A stretch of 63,866 nt of DNA, filler included, from Octopus bimaculoides (GCF_001194135.2; 7 parts of 5 records of this genome joined end to end with filler, not necessarily neighbours in it); one strand, 5' to 3'; numbered from the whole stretch's first letter, positions 45,505-53,610 are shown. Notes: generated by a model from the letters alone, not told the origin. Translations and numbers: made by a program.

Positions 45505-45770
45505 TGGTCGCCTTTCAGTCAATGCTTGTGGTCCAACGTTCCTCTCCTCTGCTTCATTATTTCTTTCCTGACTTATATTTAGGTCGTTCTCTACCGCTTT
45601 TTTAATAGAGGTCAATTCTGCATCTGTGAGTCTGGTATTTCTGAGGATATCTCTTCTAACATTTGCTAATCTGTTTTCATCTAGATTTGGTCTGCTAGCT
45701 GGATTCCGGCTCCTCCAAATTCTGTAGGAGTTTGCGGTGTGTTTCTCTTGGGTTGGCCTACTTAATGCAA
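45505..45770 (-). mobile_element. N-terminal ORF region of another R4/Dong-like copy
   Basis: SYRIWRSRNPASRPNLDENRLANVRRDILRNTRLTDAELTSIKKAV. Starts directly after the (AAT)n tail of the neighbouring copy and is cut by a scaffold break. Confidence 0.65.
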
Positions 45771-45774
45771 AATA

Positions 45775-45799
<25 letters not shown>

Positions 45800-45805
<6 letters not shown>

Positions 45806-48020
45806 TAGTTTTATTTTTATAGCGTGCTTTCACTTCACTACTGAGCGCAGCTCTGTGTGCCTTGGGCTTCCTATTCTCTATTGCATAGTCAAACTGAATC
45901 ACAAAATCCCATAGGATCTTTGCATTTCTATCTTCGATGATACCATCAGGTTTTTGGTTGTCCCAATTTTATTCTCTGTCAAGTCCATACTTGTTGCAAT
46001 GTGTCCAATGGACAAGCCTGGATATATTGTCGTGGCATCTCTTATATTCCTTCTGGGCTAGTGGTGTACATTGGCCAGTAATATGACATACAGTTTTATC
46101 GTTTTGTCCACAGATTCTGCACTTATCACTTTCTGATGTGCTGTCTATTCTGTATTTTATGTAGTTTGTTCTTAGTGCTTGCTCTCGGGCAGCACAGATT
46201 AGAGCCTCCGTTTCCGGTTTTAAATCACTTTTAGTCATCCACAGCCATCTTTTTTCTCTGTCTGTCTTATCTTCAACATCTGTATAAAACTGACCATGCA
46301 TTCTTTTCTTTATCCACCTATTTTCAGTTTCATTCGTTTTCATATTCTTGTACAGTGCTTTACCTTTGCAATCTTTCATCCTACACAAGACTGACCTTCT
46401 TACTTCTAATAATAGGGGTTCTGTGGCATTTTTTTACATACCATGCTATGTTGTTTTCTTTTGCTCTAATGCTGTGTCCTCTCATCCAATAAGTCCTCTC
46501 CCCACTCTTTTTCTTGGTACATACAGTCTGTTTGTGTCACTTTTTGGGTGGAGTGACCCATATCTAGTTAGCAACTTCCTTGTCTTTCTGTCTAAGCTGT
46601 TTAGTTCATCTACTGTCCATGCGATTACCCCTGCTCCATATCTAAGGAGTGAAACCACTCAGGTGTTGATAGCTTGAATCTTATTCCTTCCATTTAATTT
46701 CGACTTAAGGATCAGTCTCAGTCTGCGCAAATACTCCTCCTTAAATTTTTCTGCCAGTCCATACATTTGATTTTGCCTCTCTTTGAGACTAACACACCAC
46801 ACTTTCTCAGTCTGAACTCCATTCTGATATCAGCACTGAAGGTATACACCGTATCAACGAAGGAACTGACTTGGTCTCCATCTCTACCATAAAGTTTGAG
46901 GTTATTCATGAATAACAAATGGTTGAGTTTTTGTTGTCAGTTTTCGAATACAGACCCAGCTTTCACTTTCCTCAGAATCAGTGTTAGTGGTATCAAGCAC
47001 AGTACAATGATCAGTGGGGACAGGCACTCCCCTTGGAAGATGCCCTTCCTAATTTCTACTGTCCCTAAACTTCTTCTGTATGCTGTAAGGTCCATCCTCC
47101 AATTCGCCATACCTTTTCCAAGCAATTGCTCAATATTCGATGCAATACCAAATAAGTTCATACACTCCATAATCCAAGAATGTGGGATCATATCGTACAC
47201 CTTACGATAGTTGATTCATGACATGGCTAAGTTACTATTCCTCCTCTTGCAGTCTGTAAGTACAGTTTTGTCTATCAGGAGTTGATCCTTGGGACCTCTG
47301 CACTAACGCTTGCAACCCTTCTGCTCATGTGGCAAGACTCCATTTTTTTCCAGATGTTCATACATTGACTCTGCGAGTGTTCCAGTCAATAACTTCCACA
47401 TAAGTGGCAAACAGGATACCGGCCTGTAATTGTCTACCATATTGCCTTTTTCGATGCTTTTTCAGGCACAGCACTGTCCTATTCAATGTCAACCACTCTG
47501 TTATTAATTGGTCGGCATTTAACAAGGTGTTGCGTTGTGCAGCTATTCGTGCATGACATTCACCAAATCTTTTGATCCAGTAGCCTTGAACTCCATCTGG
47601 TCCTGGGGCCTTCCAGTCGCTCATTTTTTTTTTGCTGATTTCCTTCACTTCCCTAACTGAAATGACTAGTTCTGCTTGTTTGTTTCAGTTCTTGCAACCA
47701 TTCAGCATCCTTCTTGTGCTCCTTGTCTTTGCTCCAGATGTCACTCCAAAACCTTTGACTTTCAATGTTATCTGGTATCAACTTTTCATCTGTACACTCT
47801 CCATTTATTTCTTTATAGAATCTCTTCCAATCTACTCTGAATAACCTATTCTGGTGGTAACTCTTCATTCTTTGGTCGTATCTTACCATCTTTGCTCTCT
47901 TTGCAATCAAATGCTGTTTAAGTTCCTCCATTACTACTTTCAGGCCCTTTCTTTCAATATTATACTTCCTTTTCAGTGCCCTGTATTTTTGTTCACTTTT
48001 AAGCTCCCCTTTCTCTTTTC
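45800..48020 (-). mobile_element. R4/Dong-like LINE: RT, CCHC and 3' UTR, with most of the RLE deleted
   Basis: WKAPGPDGVQGYWIK, YDMIPHSWI, GIFQGECLSPL, LFMNNLKLY, MHGQF, KPETEALICAAREQALRTN, CRICGQNDKTVCHITGQC and KILWDFVIQ..ENRKP. (AAT)n tail at 45773-45800. Confidence 0.92.
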
Positions 48021-48067
48021 ATATTATTATCATCATCATCATCATCATCAGTAGTAGTAGTAGTAGT

Positions 48068-48360
48068 ACAACAAGCTGCCAGAATCATTAGGACATTGGA
48101 CAAAATGCTTAGCAGCATTTCATTTGTTTTACTTTCTGAGTTCATATTCTGCTGAGATTGACTTTGTTTTTAATCTTTTTGGGATCGATAAAATACTAAC
48201 CCCGTCCACCCCAGTTCTAGGCCTTGTGCCTCTAGCACAAAGGATTTTTGTTACTATTTTATTAAGGCAGTGAGCTGGCAGAATCATTAGTGACTTGGCA
48301 AGAATGTTCAACTGCTTTTCTTCTGACATTTTGCACTCTGAATTGAAATTTACAGGTCAG
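48068..48360 (+). mobile_element. Family B SINE followed by a second head
   Basis: AGCTGCCAGAATCATTAG..GAGTTCATATTC..GGGATCGATAAAATAC..GGCCTTGTGCC, then AAGGCAGTGAGCTGGCAGAATCATTAG. Confidence 0.75.
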
Positions 48361-49323
48361 AGTTGAGTCTGTATTACTGATGGTAGAAAAGCTGTCTGAA
48401 TTTAAATGATTAAGTGAGCTTGTAGAATTCTTACAATAAGGATAGCTAATCTTAAGTGAGTTTCTATTAAAGCTTTGGTATTTATGATTTGTTGGAAAAC
48501 AAAAAGAAATTAAGTTTAGAAAATCTTACCCGGTATAAATTCTTAAGTTTAAAGTAGCATTTGGATTTTACTTCAAAATCTTTCTTGGTCTATTTTTATA
48601 CTTTGTAATGTTTGGTGGGATTGTGTATTGTATCTTATGTGGAAAGCTGCTATAATGAAGAGCCTCATTATAATAACTAGAGGCTCTAACGAACATTACC
48701 TGTCACTCACCATATCTTGAACATATTACTTCCCTAGGCTTTAACACACTAAACTCTCAATGTCTAGCAAATAAGATGGTAGAAACCCTTTAAATTATCC
48801 AACATATTTCCAACAACAACTTTGGCCACCTTTTTGAATTCAAGGCTTCAAGTATTTTGTAGAATAGCCTATAAAAAAATCAAAGAAGTTCATAATTCAT
48901 GATTTTCTGAAACATTTTTCACACTCAGAATTGTTGAAGCATAGAATAAATTCTCTGCATCAATTGTTAGTTGTCAAGACACTGCATTCTTCAAAAGTTC
49001 CATGCTTCCCAAAATTTCCCAACACTGCACCTGTTGTGCCTATGTACCATTTCCTCTTTATGGCTCTTTCACTGTTCATATTTCTGTCCTTTTCTGTTTT
49101 AATCTGTGTGTTGTGCAAATACTTCAGGCTTTCACTGCTGTCTTTCTTTACTTGACTTATGACTACTTTCTGTTCCCCCTTTTTTTCTTTTTCTGGTGAT
49201 TTGTAGTGTACTTGAGCACTGAATACAAAAAGCTCATTATCATTATGATATTATAGAGGGACCCTGGTTGTTCCATTATTTCAGCCTTGTAGTCACTCAA
49301 AGTGATGGCATGACTGTTTAGAG

Positions 49324-49657
49324 CAGTGGTTCTCTATTTTTTGTTTCTGGACCCTTTTGATTACACTTTTATTCTGGTGGAATTCAATAGCCATTCAATG
49401 TTGAAAACCTAGTTTTATAGATACTTCTTTCAAATTTCTTATTTTGTTTATCACACATTAACTTGTATAGGCTGAACTATGTAAAATGTTAGAGAAAGAA
49501 ACTTAACTGTTTCTTGAAATAAATACATCTAAAGCAAAACTTTTTCATGGACTCAATACTACTGTGGACCACCAGTTTACTATTTTGCTTGCATGGAGTT
49601 GATCAAAATTTAATATTGAGCCCTCAAGTCCATATGGATTCCATTTGTGAAACACTG
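49324..49657. mobile_element. hAT (Charlie-like) MITE
   Basis: Termini CAGTGGTTCTC and GTGAAACACTG. 8-bp TSD GTTTAGAG / ATTTAGAG (7 of 8 match). Confidence 0.8.
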
Positions 49658-49848
49658 ATTTAGAGCTATTTCAACAAATTTTAGAAGTGAACACCAGTTG
49701 CCCCTGGTCTAATGTATAATTGAGAGAATGTAAATGTCTCTATTTTGTCTATTTGTTTACACATTTGTCATTTCCTACCTGCTTACTTTTTGTAAATTAT
49801 GTTCTTCTTCACCGAACTATTGCAAATAATATATATGATGTTTGTTAG

Positions 49849-49881
49849 ATGAAATATCCTACTCTGTCATCTACATTAAAG
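49849..49881 (+). CDS. Candidate 33-nt exon (phase 0-0) of the membrane protein gene
   Basis: TTTGTTAG|ATGAAATATCCTACTCTGTCATCTACATTAAAG|GTAATG encodes MKYPTLSSTLK, in frame with the next exon. Confidence 0.4.
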
Positions 49882-50108
49882 GTAATGGTGGTTTCTTTAG
49901 TGTCTAAGTTTATGCTGCTATATGGGTTGAGGTCAGAAATTTTGTAAATGTTAGTAATACTGCTGTTAGATAATTCTCTGTCATAAAGATGGTTTGTCTT
50001 GTTTGATGATATGTGTGCATATGTGTGTGTATCATTCAAACATATACATATGCATTTATGCATGTATGAATGCATGTATGTATGTGTATATATTACACAC
50101 ATACATGC

Positions 50109-50172
<64 letters not shown>

Positions 50173-50314
50173 GGATAGAGAGGTAGATAGATAAATAGAC
50201 AGATAGACAGACAGAGACAAAGACAGAGAGAAATAGACCGATAGACATACACATATGCGTATTGTTTCATGATGCAATTCTTTGATCTTTTCTTTTTCCT
50301 TCTATTAATTCCAG

Positions 50315-50414
50315 CAATTGGTAGAAATTAAATGTCATTTGAAGATGTTGAACAGCAGTACTGGCAAGATGACTTCTTTGGTAACCTTTATATTTGCAGC
50401 TTTTACGGTGATTG
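50315..50414 (+). CDS. Coding exon of a polytopic membrane protein (possible GRL/DUF3537-like 7TM channel)
   Basis: Long pyrimidine tract ending TTCCAG and a consensus donor G|GTAAGT. Encodes QLVEIKCHLKMLNSSTGKMTSLVTFIFAAFTVI(G). Confidence 0.7.
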
Positions 50415-50645
50415 GTAAGTTTCTCTACACTTTTCTTTTTAGTTTACTAAGATACTTCCTCAGGGTTTGGACTTTACTCCACTTAAATCTTTTTTTGTAT
50501 TCAGTTTACAGAGTTTATTGAGTTTTGGCTTAACATAACTAAAAACTTCAAATATATATAGTATTTTTTGTTTTTCTTTTATGTTGGTGTTTTCTTTTCA
50601 GTAATCTCTGTTAATCTCTGTTATGGTTTTATCTCATAAACATAG

Positions 50646-50752
50646 GTTTGAATACATTATGTATGAATACTGCAGACCAGGCAGATATTTGGGTCTACCG
50701 GAGTCTTTTTCCTCTTGTCTGGGGAGTCATGCTCTTTGCTCCATTAATACAG
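50646..50752 (+). CDS. Next coding exon of the same membrane protein
   Basis: Acceptor CTCATAAACATAG and donor CAG|GTAAGA. Phase 1 to 0 continues the frame: (G)LNTLCMNTADQADIWVYRSLFPLVWGVMLFAPLIQ. Confidence 0.7.
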
Positions 50753-51192
50753 GTAAGAAACACCAAATATCTTCATTTTGTATTATCATTTGCTCTGTTA
50801 ACAAAGTAATATCGATAATAATTCCTTAAAAAGACATAAAATCCGAGATTTTTAAAAGAAAGCAAAATGGGAAGATGTGGTGTTTGTACTTAATTTTCAC
50901 CAAGTGATTATTAATGGATATCACAACTAAATATCCAACTCTTGTTACTGGGAACTTAAAGCTGCTCTTTGACATCTGTCAATGAGAATAATGATGACTT
51001 CAAATTTTGGTGGTAGGGTTGTGTTGAATTAACCCCAGCACTGGAAATTTTCTTGTTTATGTTGGTCACCAGAAGGATGTGAAGAAAGTCAGTTAACTGT
51101 GATTTGAGCTTAAACAACACAAACTATTTTGTCTACTATGCTAAAAATTCTGTCATTCACTAATGTCTTATGAATAAATACAAAGATCGTTA

Positions 51193-51540
51193 CCAGCGTT
51201 GCCTTCCTGGCACTTGTGCCAGTGGCACATGAAAAGACATTCAAGCGAGGTCGTTGCCAGTGCCACTGGACTGTCTCATGTGCAGGTGGCACGTAAAATG
51301 CACCATTTTGAGCGTGGCCATTGCCAGTACCGTCTGACTGGCCTTCATGCCTGTGGTACATAAAAGCATCCACTACACTCTCGGAGTGGTTGGCGTTAGG
51401 AAGGGCATCCAGCTGTAGAAACTCTGCCAAATCAGATTGGAGCCTGGTGTAGCCATCTGGTTTGCCAGTCCTCAGTCAAATCGTCCAACCCATGCTAGCA
51501 TGGAAGGTGGACATTAAGCGATGAGGATGATGATGATGTA
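51193..51540 (+). mobile_element. SINE/RTE-type 3' region with internal GCCAGTG/GGTGGCAC sub-repeats and a (GAT)n tail
   Basis: GAGTGGTTGGCGTTAGGAAGGGCATCCAGCTGTAGAAACTCTGCC..CCCATGCTAGCATGGAA, then (GAT)n. A second copy lies at 52328-52500. Confidence 0.8.
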
Positions 51541-52327
51541 GCGATGAGGACTGGCATATAAGCTGAGGAACTAAGCACACAAGATAAAATTAAGATGAAT
51601 GACATAATACATCCCCTTGTCTTCAATAGGAATTTAAATTTGAAAGGATGTGAAAATGGCTTAAAAGTGCTGTTTTAATATCTAAAACAGAAGAATATAT
51701 ATTTGTTGAGAAAGACCAAAGTTTATCCACAATAAACTAGTTAAAAAATAGCTTAAATGGAGACAGTAAATGTAGGCTATACAGTGAACAACAAAAACAT
51801 TATCTCCAATTCTCTGATTTCGGCCAAGTCAAAATATATACATAGGTAGGTTGAAACAATGAGAGAACCTCTATGCAGTTATTTGACATGTTAAAAATAG
51901 CAGCAAAAATTTTCCTCAAATCACATCAAACCAAAAATAATTATAAAAAATGAAGATGGAATAGTCATTGCTGATTATAGATGTGCTAAACCATGATATG
52001 AAGGCTAAGTAATTACGACCAAATAGTAGTTATAGTCACTACAATACCAAATTAAACTAACAACAAATAATATAAGCACACATCAAAATATGGAGACTCT
52101 AAATATAACCAAGTCATTATATACTGATGCAAAGTGATAGGGAAAAGCAAACCACTCAGACATTATTATTAAAGATTAAGTTACAAAGTTACAAAAGGAT
52201 ATATTTGTTCAGAACAAGGTAGATATGGATTTCAGTTTAGATATGATATATGAATCGTTCATTCTATTTGGAGCAATAGTAGTTTAAACAAACAATGACA
52301 AATCATACACCCGTGGATCTAGGTATA

Positions 52328-52500
52328 AATATCTACACTCTCTGAGTGGTTGGCGTTAGGAAGGGCATCCAGCTGTAGAAACTCTGCCAAATTAGATTGG
52401 AGCCTGGTGTTGCCATCTGGTTTCACCAGTCCTCAGTCAAATTGTCCTACCCATGCTAGCATGGAAAGCGGATGTTAAACGATGATGATGATGATGATGA
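52328..52500 (+). mobile_element. Shorter copy of the same element, ending in (GAT)n
   Basis: Near-identical to 51375-51535. Confidence 0.85.
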
Positions 52501-52664
52501 TTTCAATAAGCAGCTTCATATGACTGTATACATTCTATGTAAAAAGGAATAATTAAAAATGATAATTTGTTTGACACTCTACTGAGTCTACCAATTATCA
52601 CTCAAATAACATTCTAACGTAGGCCCAGATCACAAATTCTGATTAATAAAAAAAGTAAAGGTAC

Positions 52665-52910
52665 TGTCTCGAGTCACACCAACTCACAAGGGTCAGTTTC
52701 TCAGTTTCATGGCATATATATTTATTCCCCACCTGGATGGGACGCCAGTTCATCACAGGATTACTCATTTTTGCCAGCTGAGTGGACTGGAGCAACATGA
52801 AATGAAGTGTTTTGCTCAAGAACACAATGCGGCGCCTGGTCCAGGAATTGAAACTACAATCTTACAATCATGAGTCCCAACATCCTAACAACTAAGCCAC
52901 ATGCCTCCAC
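52665..52910 (-). mobile_element. OR2-like SINE head with a different (V-domain-like) tail
   Basis: Minus strand: GTGGAGGCATGTGGCTTAGTTG..TTGTGTTCTTGAGCAAAACACTT..CCACTCAGCTGGCAAAAATGAGTA, then CCTGTGATGAACTGGCGTCCCATCCAGG. Confidence 0.8.
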
Positions 52911-52934
52911 AACAAATTCTAGTGGAAGAATGTA

Positions 52935-53315
52935 GTCGATAAATTAAGTACCGGTTGCATACTGGGGTCAATCTAATCGACTGTCCTGTCCCCAAAAATT
53001 TCGGGCCTTGTGCCTAGAGTGGAAAAAAGAATATTAAACAGATGCAACAAAATACTATAATAAGCATTTTGTCTGTTTGTTATGATCTCTGTCATCAACA
53101 TTATCAACAGTTTAGGAAGAAAGCCAGTAATTTTTGAGTGGGTGGTTTAGTGGATAACATCAACTCCAGCACTTGACCAGTCCTTATTTTTATTGACCGT
53201 AGAAGGACGAAAAGCAAATATGCCTTTGGCAGGATTTGAATTCAGAAAGCCAAGAGCCAGACCAAAGCCCACAAAGTATTTTTTCTGATGCTCAAGCAAG
53301 TCTGCCAACCCTCTA
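52935..53315. mobile_element. Two family B SINE fragments (+ at 52935-53030, - at 53150-53315)
   Basis: GTCGATAAATTAAGTACC..ACTGGGGTC..GGCCTTGTGCCTAGAGT, and the reverse complement of a diverged copy. Confidence 0.7.
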
Positions 53316-53610
53316 CCCTTATTAGCTGTTCCTAACATTTCTGCCAGTTCAATGATGATGATGATGATGATGATGATGGTGATGGTGATGGTGGTGGTGG
53401 TGGTGGTGGTGGTGGTGGTGGAGTCAAAATTAAAAGCAAAGTGCCATTGTTATCTAGTGAACGATATTTCAACATCTTGTATGTCTTCAACTGGTTCAAA
53501 AAATAAATTTNNNNNNNNNNNNNNNNNNNNNNNNNNNNNNNNNNNNNNNNNNNNTTAATTAATTAANNNNNNNNNNNNNNNNNNNNNNNNNNNNNNNNNN
53601 NNNNNNNNNN

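What the first reader, a model, noticed from the sequence alone, without database searches (positions are those of the whole stretch)
49849..50752. Spliceable exons of a polytopic membrane protein resembling gustatory-receptor-like (GRL/DUF3537, 7TM ion channel) proteins
Seen: two exons with strong splice signals (50315-50414, TTCCAG...G|GTAAGT; 50646-50752, CATAG...CAG|GTAAGA) join in frame across a phase-1 intron. A weaker 33-nt exon (49849-49881) fits upstream. Spliced peptide: MKYPTLSSTLK/QLVEIKCHLKMLNSSTGKMTSLVTFIFAAFTVIG/LNTLCMNTADQADIWVYRSLFPLVWGVMLFAPLIQ. This is an amphipathic helix followed by two hydrophobic segments with a short loop. The ORF track cannot show the spliced product. 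Inference, from recalled resemblance only: the pattern (LN..G.M.SL, WxYRS, W, PLxQ expected to continue AAxxN) fits helices 5-6 of insect-GR/OR-related 7TM channels found in other invertebrates. The characterised octopus chemotactile receptors derive from nicotinic receptors, so a 7TM channel would be a separate, little-studied candidate sensory lineage. The remaining exons are absent, which is plausible because this scaffold is only 8 kb (45505-53510).
Basis: partly seen in the sequence, partly recalled or inferred. Interest (0 to 1): 0.72.

Follow-up and report, generated by a model that had tools for sequence, protein, structure and literature searches.

The report
Two exons of octopus GrlHz gene
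The two stronger exons are real: they are coding exons 9 and 10 of an already annotated Octopus bimaculoides gene (LOC106874396), the octopus copy of GrlHz, a conserved relative of insect taste and smell receptor channels whose function is unknown, so the finding is correct but not new.

Summary
The exons at 50315-50414 and 50646-50752 (+) are real. Their spliced 69-residue product is 100% identical to residues 363-431 of RefSeq XP_014777607.1 (O. bimaculoides LOC106874396, 519 aa). It is also identical in the O. sinensis and O. vulgaris models. The 8,006-base piece matches chromosome CM046605.1 of GCA_001194135.2 at 100% and lies between two assembly gaps.

They are coding exons 9 and 10 of 12. 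The gastropod Littorina saxatilis has the same exon lengths (100 and 107 nt) and intron phases (0/1/0).

The proposed 33-nt first exon (49849-49881) is in no gene model. The true upstream exon ends ...DLPKGMK and lies 9.5 kb away, outside the piece.

The full protein has seven membrane helices and a likely N-in topology. Its AlphaFold2 model matches only insect GR, OR and Orco structures: the top 20 PDB hits have E 3e-5 to 6e-3, and the next hit has E 0.23. The 7TM ion-channel call and "helices 5-6" therefore hold.

No Pfam family matches, including 7tm_7 and DUF3537. The protein belongs to GrlHz (fly CG3831) and is listed by accession in Benton & Himmel 2023. A sensory role is unsupported, because fly GrlHz is broadly expressed outside neurons. 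Verdict: real, correctly read, already known.

The parts
50315..50414 (+). Coding exon 9 of 12 of O. bimaculoides LOC106874396 (GrlHz orthologue). It is 100 nt and encodes residues 363-396 (QLVEIK...FTVI plus the first base of G396). These form the cytoplasmic extension and membrane part of helix 5 (S5).
   Evidence: Translation. 100% tblastn match to P0001-P0003. Spliced mapping on L001 64668-64767 gives cds 1087-1186, with a phase-0 intron before and a phase-1 intron after. Littorina has the same 100-nt exon.
50415..50645 (+). Intron 9, 231 nt, phase 1, GTAAGT...ATAG.
   Evidence: The ORF reads on past the donor but matches no homologue there.
50646..50752 (+). Coding exon 10 of 12. It is 107 nt and encodes residues 396-431 (GLNTLCMNTADQADIWVYRSLFPLVWGVMLFAPLIQ). 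These form the outer end of helix 5, the short extracellular loop and the outer half of helix 6 (S6).
   Evidence: Nearly invariant residues in 11 homologues: I395 G396 N403 W411 R414 F417 W421 L425 P428 Q431. Littorina has the same 107-nt exon, followed by a phase-0 intron.
45505..50314 (+). The 3' part of intron 8, which is 9,542 nt in the chromosome assembly. The acceptor AG is at 50313-50314.
   Evidence: Exon 8 (...DLPKGMK) maps to L001 54948-55125, upstream of the gap that bounds the piece. No part of P0002 other than the two exons matches the piece.
50753..53510 (+). The 5' part of intron 10, which is 10,503 nt. The donor GT is at 50753-50754. This stretch contains two interspersed-repeat copies and a (GAT)n(GGT)n microsatellite.
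   Evidence: Exon 11 (AARVNS...) maps to L001 75609-75740, beyond the downstream gap.

Best explanation
Window 50315-50414 and 50646-50752 (+) are coding exons 9 and 10 of the 12-exon, 67.5-kb Octopus bimaculoides gene LOC106874396 (XP_014777607.1, 519 aa). This gene is the octopus orthologue of GrlHz (Gustatory receptor-like Holozoa; Drosophila CG3831), a conserved lineage of the seven-transmembrane ion channel (7TMIC) superfamily founded by insect gustatory and odorant receptors.

Shown here:
- the gene identity and the exon boundaries;
- the conservation of those boundaries in a gastropod;
- seven helices with a charge distribution that fits an N-in/C-out topology;
- a predicted fold that matches only GR, OR and Orco structures;
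- sequence membership of the GrlHz set.

The two exons encode helix S5 with its cytoplasmic extension, the short S5-S6 extracellular loop, and the outer half of S6.

Inferred by analogy with solved Orco, MhOR5 and BmGr9 structures:
- four subunits assemble around a pore lined by the C-terminal helix S7b;
- the cytoplasmic ends of S4, S5, S6 and S7a form the anchor domain that holds the tetramer together;
- S5 packs against S7b and couples the pocket formed by S1-S6 to the gate;
- the conserved Q504 near the outer end of S7b would correspond to the gating glutamine of GRs.

The ligand, the ion selectivity and the tissue of action are unknown. The fly orthologue's broad non-neuronal expression points to a general cellular role rather than chemosensation.
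For: Gene identity:
- The 69-aa product is 100% identical to P0001, P0002 and P0003 (E 5e-38 to 7e-37).
- These are XP_014777607.1 (O. bimaculoides), CAI9722727.1 (O. vulgaris) and A0A0L8GW10. O. sinensis XP_029637129.1 is in the same cluster.
- The whole piece is 100% identical over 8,006 nt to CM046605.1.

Exon structure:
- Littorina shares exon lengths 178/100/107/132 and phases 0/1/0.
- Fragments P0009 and P0013 from other species read through into 'V...' right after the final Q, where a GT donor would sit.

Conservation: 11-sequence alignment A1, with 24-36% overall identity to the non-octopus homologues.

Fold:
- AF2 model: pTM 0.64, with pLDDT 77-88 over most of the exon-encoded region.
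- The top 20 Foldseek PDB hits are all GR, OR or Orco, including BmGr9 8vc2 (E 3e-5), Gr64a 8jme, MhOR5 7lic (TM 0.53/0.69) and Orco 6c70 (E 2e-4). Rank 21 has E 0.23.
- Model helices 304-353, 357-401 and 408-452 are long. The last segment is split into 459-471 and 485-505, like S7a/S7b.

Topology: K+R counts are 7.3/3.5/6.6/7.8 in the predicted cytoplasmic segments and 4.3/1.3/1.0/1.1 in the outer ones. N-glycosylation sequons are concentrated in the TM1-2 loop.

GrlHz membership:
- XP_014777607.1 is listed in 'GrlHz-Dmel-CG3831.fasta' and in the GrlHz phylogeny files of PMC9998090.
- BLASTP of P0002 against the 7TM part of Osmia XP_034184817.1 from that file gives E 9e-25 over 430 residues.

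Mechanistic framework: BmGr9 paper PMC10769236.
Against: - No Pfam family matches any member at E<=10, and a sequence profile finds no solved structure. The link to GR/OR therefore rests on a predicted fold of moderate confidence (mean pLDDT 61, from 11 sequences) and on published network analyses.
- The GR signature TYhhhhhQF is not kept. Octopus has CFLFPILFQT, where only the Q is conserved.
- No channel activity, tetramer or ligand has been shown for any GrlHz protein. Benton & Himmel state that a different activity cannot be excluded.
- I saw no octopus transcript reads directly. The splice junction rests on gene models from three species and on orthologue exon structure.
Confidence: 0.9

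Rival explanations
1. The exons belong to a classical chemosensory GRL/GR-family gene, that is, a member of the expanded taste-receptor-like families of invertebrates. They would mark a sensory receptor lineage in octopus.
For: The fold matches GRs and ORs. UniRef names the Batillaria homologue P0019 'Gustatory receptor'. A glutamine is conserved near the end of the last helix.
Against: There is no Pfam 7tm_7, Trehalose_recp or 7tm_6 match at E<=10 for eleven family members. TYhhhhhQF is absent. The searches run here returned a single gene per species sampled, not an expanded family. The gene sits in the published GrlHz set, which forms its own cluster. The fly member is expressed in heart, ovary, testis, fat body and nephrocytes rather than in taste neurons. 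Other octopus genes, such as LOC106874590, are the ones placed in the Gr/GRL network.
Confidence: 0.05
2. The exon pair is a chance product of AT-rich sequence: open frames bounded by AG and GT that happen to encode hydrophobic peptides.
For: 8% of Markov-simulated 8-kb pieces give a joinable pair at the same thresholds. T-rich DNA readily encodes F/L/I/V runs. The first word-indexed search and Pfam found nothing.
Against: The peptide has 100% matches to annotated proteins of three Octopus species. It has E 1e-11 to 1e-4 matches to other phyla in a 1.84-billion-protein library. Exon lengths and phases are identical in Littorina.
Confidence: 0.01
3. The protein is a seven-helix membrane protein of another kind (GPCR, transporter, adiponectin-receptor-like), and the similarity to insect receptors is an artefact of the model.
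For: The model has only moderate confidence (mean pLDDT 61). TM-scores normalised to the query are 0.42-0.53. No sequence-level link to GR/OR was found.
Confidence: 0.04

Closest known systems
GrlHz (Gustatory receptor-like Holozoa; Drosophila melanogaster CG3831, UniProt Q9W1W8), defined by Benton & Himmel 2023, eLife 12:e85537
   Same: It is the same family. The octopus protein XP_014777607.1 is in their homologue set and phylogeny. It aligns over all seven helices with a hymenopteran member at E 9e-25. It shares the blocks CKxxxLxPY, LHxxxxxxxxxxFR..NEQ, NYxxQCE, PxxQAAR, LDS and AKLF.
   Different: The octopus protein lacks the long N-terminal WD40 (Nol10-like) extension seen in some members, for example the hymenopteran models. 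Nothing is known about its expression.
Insect gustatory receptors (BmGr9, Gr43a, Gr64a), odorant receptors (MhOR5, AgamOR28) and Orco: solved tetrameric ligand-gated cation channels
   Same: The predicted fold is shared (Foldseek E 3e-5 to 6e-3, target-normalised TM 0.54-0.69 for the full-length matches). Other shared features are seven helices, N-in topology, long S4-S6 helices, a split S7a/S7b, and a glutamine near the outer end of S7b.
   Different: Structure-aligned identity is 9-14%. There is no Pfam 7tm_7 or 7tm_6 match. TYhhhhhQF is reduced to ...FQT. GrlHz is conserved across phyla, with one gene per species in the searches run here, rather than a rapidly expanding family. No ligand or current is known.
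Plant and protist DUF3537 (PF12056) and PHTF proteins, other 7TMIC lineages
   Same: They belong to the same proposed superfamily at fold level, according to PMC9998090 and bioRxiv 10.1101/2023.08.30.555482.
   Different: There is no PF12056 match. In the published network GrlHz connects only to the Or/Gr/Grl clusters, not to DUF3537 or PHTF. Octopus PHTF is a separate gene (O. sinensis XP_029634264.1).
Cephalopod chemotactile receptors (nicotinic-receptor-derived pentameric channels)
   Different: The fold and family are unrelated, and there is no neurotransmitter-gated channel Pfam match.

Membership tests
7TMIC superfamily (insect Gr/Or/Orco and relatives) | Seven transmembrane helices | tested here: met
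   Seven hydropathy peaks at about 132-150, 212-230, 268-290, 311-342, 384-402, 412-433 and 485-503. The AF2 model has matching helices.
7TMIC superfamily (insect Gr/Or/Orco and relatives) | Intracellular N-terminus and extracellular C-terminus (inverse of GPCRs) | tested here: met
   Positive-inside count over 11 homologues: K+R 7.3/3.5/6.6/7.8 inside and 4.3/1.3/1.0/1.1 outside. Glycosylation sequons are concentrated in the TM1-2 loop. This is a computational inference only.
7TMIC superfamily (insect Gr/Or/Orco and relatives) | Tertiary fold like Orco/OR/GR, with long S4-S6 helices forming an anchor domain and a split S7a/S7b | tested here: met
   The top 20 Foldseek PDB hits are all GR, OR or Orco (E 3e-5 to 6e-3), and the next hit has E 0.23. 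Model helices 304-353, 357-401, 408-452, 459-471 and 485-505.
7TMIC superfamily (insect Gr/Or/Orco and relatives) | Tetrameric ligand-gated cation channel | not testable with these tools
   This needs expression, electrophysiology or cryo-EM. It has not been shown for any GrlHz protein.
GrlHz (CG3831 lineage) | Significant full-length sequence similarity to CG3831 homologues | tested here: met
   BLASTP against Osmia XP_034184817.1 (7TM part) gives E 9e-25 over 430 aligned columns. XP_014777607.1 is listed in the published GrlHz FASTA and trees. The fly protein itself was not compared directly.
GrlHz (CG3831 lineage) | Conserved across animal phyla, not lineage-specifically expanded | tested here: met
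   Homologues were found in molluscs, an annelid, a hemichordate and a chelicerate, with one gene per species in the hit lists. Copy number was not checked exhaustively.
Insect/animal GR family (Pfam 7tm_7 PF08395, Trehalose_recp PF06151) | Match to the family profile | tested here: not met
   No such match at E<=10 for the peptide or for eleven full-length or near-full-length homologues.
Insect/animal GR family (Pfam 7tm_7 PF08395, Trehalose_recp PF06151) | TYhhhhhQF motif in the last helix | tested here: not met
   Octopus has CFLFPILFQT. Across A1, F497, Q504 and T505 are at least 90% conserved and L502 is invariant, with no T-Y pair and no F after Q. The motif definition is from PMC10769236.
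DUF3537 (PF12056) | Match to the family profile | tested here: not met
   No match at E<=10.

The most novel reading that the evidence does not exclude
Octopus GrlHz could be a ligand-gated channel used in sensory cells, such as those of the suckers or the olfactory organ. That would give cephalopods a 7TMIC-based chemosensory route alongside the nicotinic-receptor-derived chemotactile receptors. Nothing here excludes it, because no octopus expression data were available. However, the conservation across phyla and the non-neuronal expression of the fly orthologue argue for a general cellular function.
Probability: 0.05. Interest if true: 0.6.

Novelty: already known. Interest (0 to 1): 0.2.

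Why it matters
The practical value is small. The gene is already in RefSeq as 'uncharacterized protein LOC106874396', and Benton & Himmel (2023) already placed it in the GrlHz lineage.

The check does show two useful things:
- A reader working from raw sequence can correctly recover two exons and the family of a protein that has no Pfam domain.
- The older UniProt model A0A0L8GW10 carries a spurious low-complexity exon taken from a microsatellite in this piece.

GrlHz itself remains an open problem. It is a 7TMIC conserved from single-celled holozoans to lancelets, with no known ligand, current or phenotype. The exons here encode S5 and outer S6. In solved GRs these helices couple the binding pocket to the pore, so their strongly conserved residues (W411, R414, F417, W421, P428, Q431) are natural mutagenesis targets.

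Tried and rejected
Searches that found nothing or did not help:
- Pfam on the 69- and 80-aa peptides: nothing at E<=10.
- Word-indexed homologue search with the 69-aa peptide: no candidates. This was a limit of that index, because the exhaustive HMMER search then found the exact proteins.
- Pfam on eleven full-length or near-full-length homologues: only sub-threshold noise such as Big_12, DUF6249 and DUF468.
- Profile of A1 against PDB sequences: only chance RIPK2 CARD hits at E about 0.1 in the disordered N-terminus.
- Profile search with A1 to reach arthropod or fly members: no new sequences.
- Genomic locus of the Owenia homologue: not on record.
- tRNA and Rfam scans of the piece: nothing.

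Readings considered and rejected:
It has a moderate donor (crude score 7.3, against 8.4 and 11.2 for the real ones), but it is absent from every model. As a start exon it would give a protein with only helices 5-7.
- An exon-like ORF at 48971-49195 (+) flagged by my crude splice scan. It has no match to any homologue and is treated as chance.
- A pseudogene reading. The frames are intact and the 69 residues are identical in three Octopus species.

Full report
**The observation.** The piece (window 45505-53510) was read in full. The two stronger exons are as described:
- 50315-50414: 100 nt, acceptor ttccAG|, donor |GTAAGT.
- 50646-50752: 107 nt, acceptor acatAG|, donor |GTAAGA.

They join in one open frame across a 231-nt phase-1 intron. 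The product is QLVEIKCHLKMLNSSTGKMTSLVTFIFAAFTVIGLNTLCMNTADQADIWVYRSLFPLVWGVMLFAPLIQ.

A crude splice scan gave these scores:
- exon at 50315: acceptor 4.7, donor 8.4;
- exon at 50646: weaker acceptor 1.9, strong donor 11.2.

Signals alone are not compelling. With thresholds set just to admit the observed sites, 8% of third-order-Markov simulations of the piece gave at least one joinable pair on either strand.

**Homology.** Pfam found nothing for the peptide, and the word-indexed search returned no candidate. An exhaustive HMMER search of 1.84 billion representative proteins found 13 hits.
- Three hits are 100% identical over all 69 residues (E 5e-38 to 7e-37).
- Further hits at 38-48% identity (E 1e-11 to 2e-5) come from other phyla.

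The exact matches are:
- XP_014777607.1: 'uncharacterized protein LOC106874396', O. bimaculoides, 519 aa, P0002;
- CAI9722727.1: O. vulgaris, P0001;
- A0A0L8GW10: an older O. bimaculoides model, P0003.

O. sinensis XP_029637129.1 is in the same 90% cluster. The more distant hits are from the chiton Liolophura, the annelid Owenia, the hemichordate Saccoglossus and the horseshoe crab Tachypleus. A search with the full protein added the gastropods Batillaria, Littorina and Nucella.

In the protein, the exon-encoded stretch is residues 363-431. It is preceded by ...RFLDSGQDLPKGMK and followed by AARVNSACKRF.

**Genomic context.** The locus of XP_014777607.1 was fetched from O. bimaculoides GCA_001194135.2, chromosome CM046605.1 (L001).
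- The whole piece is 100% identical over 8,006 nt to L001 59858-67863.
- It lies between N runs at L001 56747-59857 and 67864-70194, so it is a contig between assembly gaps.

Spliced mapping gives a gene of about 67.5 kb. Counting the N-terminal exons from the tblastn matches, it has 12 coding exons. The window holds coding exons 9 (100 nt) and 10 (107 nt). The flanking introns are 9,542 nt (phase 0), 231 nt (phase 1) and 10,503 nt (phase 0). Only these two exons of P0002 match the piece.

The Littorina saxatilis orthologue (L002) has the same run of exon lengths, 178/100/107/132 nt, with the same phases 0/1/0. Two further observations support the same boundaries:
- Short fragments P0009 and P0013 from other species read through into 'V...' directly after the final Q, as expected if a GT donor sits there.
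- A homologue, P0006, is an uninterrupted 521-codon ORF on an 1,839-nt contig.

**What the protein is.** An 11-sequence alignment (A1) shows strong conservation in several blocks: CKxQVLxPY, LHxIAFxxGxYxFRIQxNEQ, NYxxQCE, LNG...KMTSL, WVYRSxFPxVW, FPLIQAARVNS, ELDSF, LRAKLF and LxQT. Hydropathy gives seven segments, and the window's exons cover the fifth and sixth. No Pfam family, including 7tm_7, 7tm_6 and DUF3537, matches any member at E<=10. A sequence profile finds no solved structure.

An AlphaFold2 model built on A1 has pTM 0.64 and mean pLDDT 61. The low values come mostly from the N-terminus and the TM1-2 loop. The region encoded by the window scores 77-88, apart from the loop. The model shows:
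- long helices at 304-353, 357-401 and 408-452;
- a short helix at 459-471 followed by helix 485-505. This is the S4-S6 and S7a/S7b pattern of Orco-type channels.

Foldseek against the PDB returned 20 matches at E 3e-5 to 6e-3 with probability 1.00. All are insect gustatory receptors (BmGr9, Gr43a, Gr64a), odorant receptors (MhOR5, AgamOR28, AaegOR10, ApisOR5) or Orco. Target-normalised TM-scores are 0.54-0.69 over 430-460 columns for the full-length matches. The next match has E 0.23 and probability 0.21.

Loop charges fit an intracellular N-terminus and extracellular C-terminus. K+R is 7.3/3.5/6.6/7.8 in the predicted cytoplasmic segments and 4.3/1.3/1.0/1.1 in the outer ones. N-glycosylation sequons are concentrated in the TM1-2 loop.

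**Which lineage.** Benton & Himmel (2023, PMC9998090) described GrlHz (fly CG3831) as a 7TMIC conserved across Holozoa. It forms its own sequence cluster, and in flies it is expressed in heart, ovary, testis, fat body and nephrocytes rather than in taste neurons.

XP_014777607.1 appears by accession in their file 'GrlHz-Dmel-CG3831.fasta' and in all source files of the GrlHz phylogeny. As an independent check, I aligned P0002 with the 7TM part of Osmia lignaria XP_034184817.1, taken from that file. The result was E 9e-25 and 25% identity over 430 columns spanning all helices.

The GR signature TYhhhhhQF (PMC10769236) is not kept. Octopus has CFLFPILFQT, with only the glutamine conserved. The protein is therefore a 7TMIC of the GrlHz lineage, not a member of the GR/GRL or DUF3537 families in the Pfam sense.

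The same paper's data place other octopus genes in the Gr/GRL network (LOC106874590) and in PHTF. Those genes, not this one, would be the natural candidates for a taste-receptor-like sensory lineage.

**How it most likely works.** In BmGr9, Orco and MhOR5:
- four subunits form a central pore lined by S7b;
- S1-S6 form the ligand pocket;
- S5 packs against S7b and transmits pocket movements to the gate;
- a conserved glutamine at the outer end of S7b swings into the pore on opening.

By analogy, exon 9 encodes the cytoplasmic (anchor) and membrane parts of S5. Exon 10 encodes the outer end of S5, the seven-residue extracellular loop and the outer half of S6, with the conserved residues W411, R414, F417, W421, P428 and Q431. 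All of this is inference. No GrlHz protein has been shown to conduct ions or to bind a ligand.

**Verdict.** The sensory role is unsupported. The gene and its family assignment are already published, so novelty and interest are low.

Noticed in passing
window 53348-53421 (+): A (GAT)n(GGT)n microsatellite translates in one frame to FNDDDDDDDDGDGDGGGGGGGGG. Exactly this string follows PLIQ in the older UniProt model A0A0L8GW10 (P0003, 755 aa). That model therefore took the microsatellite, and further acidic low-complexity stretches downstream, as coding exons. RefSeq XP_014777607.1 does not.
   Followed up: yes
window 45505-48020 (-): A series of frame-shifted ORFs on the minus strand look like a decayed non-LTR retrotransposon inside intron 8. 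The Pfam hits are weak and below threshold: RVT_1 E 0.004 for 46937-47200 and zf-RVT E 0.002 for 45969-46388.
   Followed up: partly
window 51194-51538 and 52333-52508; also L001 4968-5100, 11252-11517, 51303-51655, 56078-56176: An interspersed repeat of about 170-340 nt occurs twice in the piece at about 92% identity, and at least four more times in other introns and flanks of the same gene at 90-95%, on both strands. There is no tRNA or Rfam match, and the element type was not identified.
   Followed up: partly
window 50101-50233: Compound AT / ATAG / AGAC microsatellites lie 80-210 nt upstream of the exon-9 acceptor. They create long spurious ORFs on both strands, for example 49845-50270 (-), 141 aa.
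   Followed up: no
window 50752/50753 donor; P0015 and P0001: O. sinensis isoform X2 (XP_036359178.1, 475 aa) joins the donor after PLIQ directly to the last exon. It skips the 132-nt exon that encodes AARVN...KLR, the inner S6 and S7a region. The O. vulgaris model CAI9722727.1 (259 aa) joins ...NVSNNVM directly to QLVEIK and omits helices 1-4. It is not known whether these are real isoforms or annotation artefacts.
   Followed up: partly
L004 (ENA ERZ23486772, scaffold_82252, 1,839 nt): A complete 521-aa GrlHz homologue (P0006, 30% identical to octopus) sits as an uninterrupted ORF on a short contig of a metagenome assembly. It is either transcript-derived or an intronless gene of an unidentified animal.
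   Followed up: no
L001 56747-59857 and 67864-70194: The piece is bounded on both sides by runs of N in the chromosome-level assembly GCA_001194135.2. About 20.6 kb of the 87.6-kb locus is N, so intron lengths for this gene are estimates.
   Followed up: yes
window 48971-49195 (+): An exon-like open frame with acceptable splice scores encodes a hydrophobic peptide. It appeared in my crude scan, matches no homologue of the gene, and is probably chance.
   Followed up: partly
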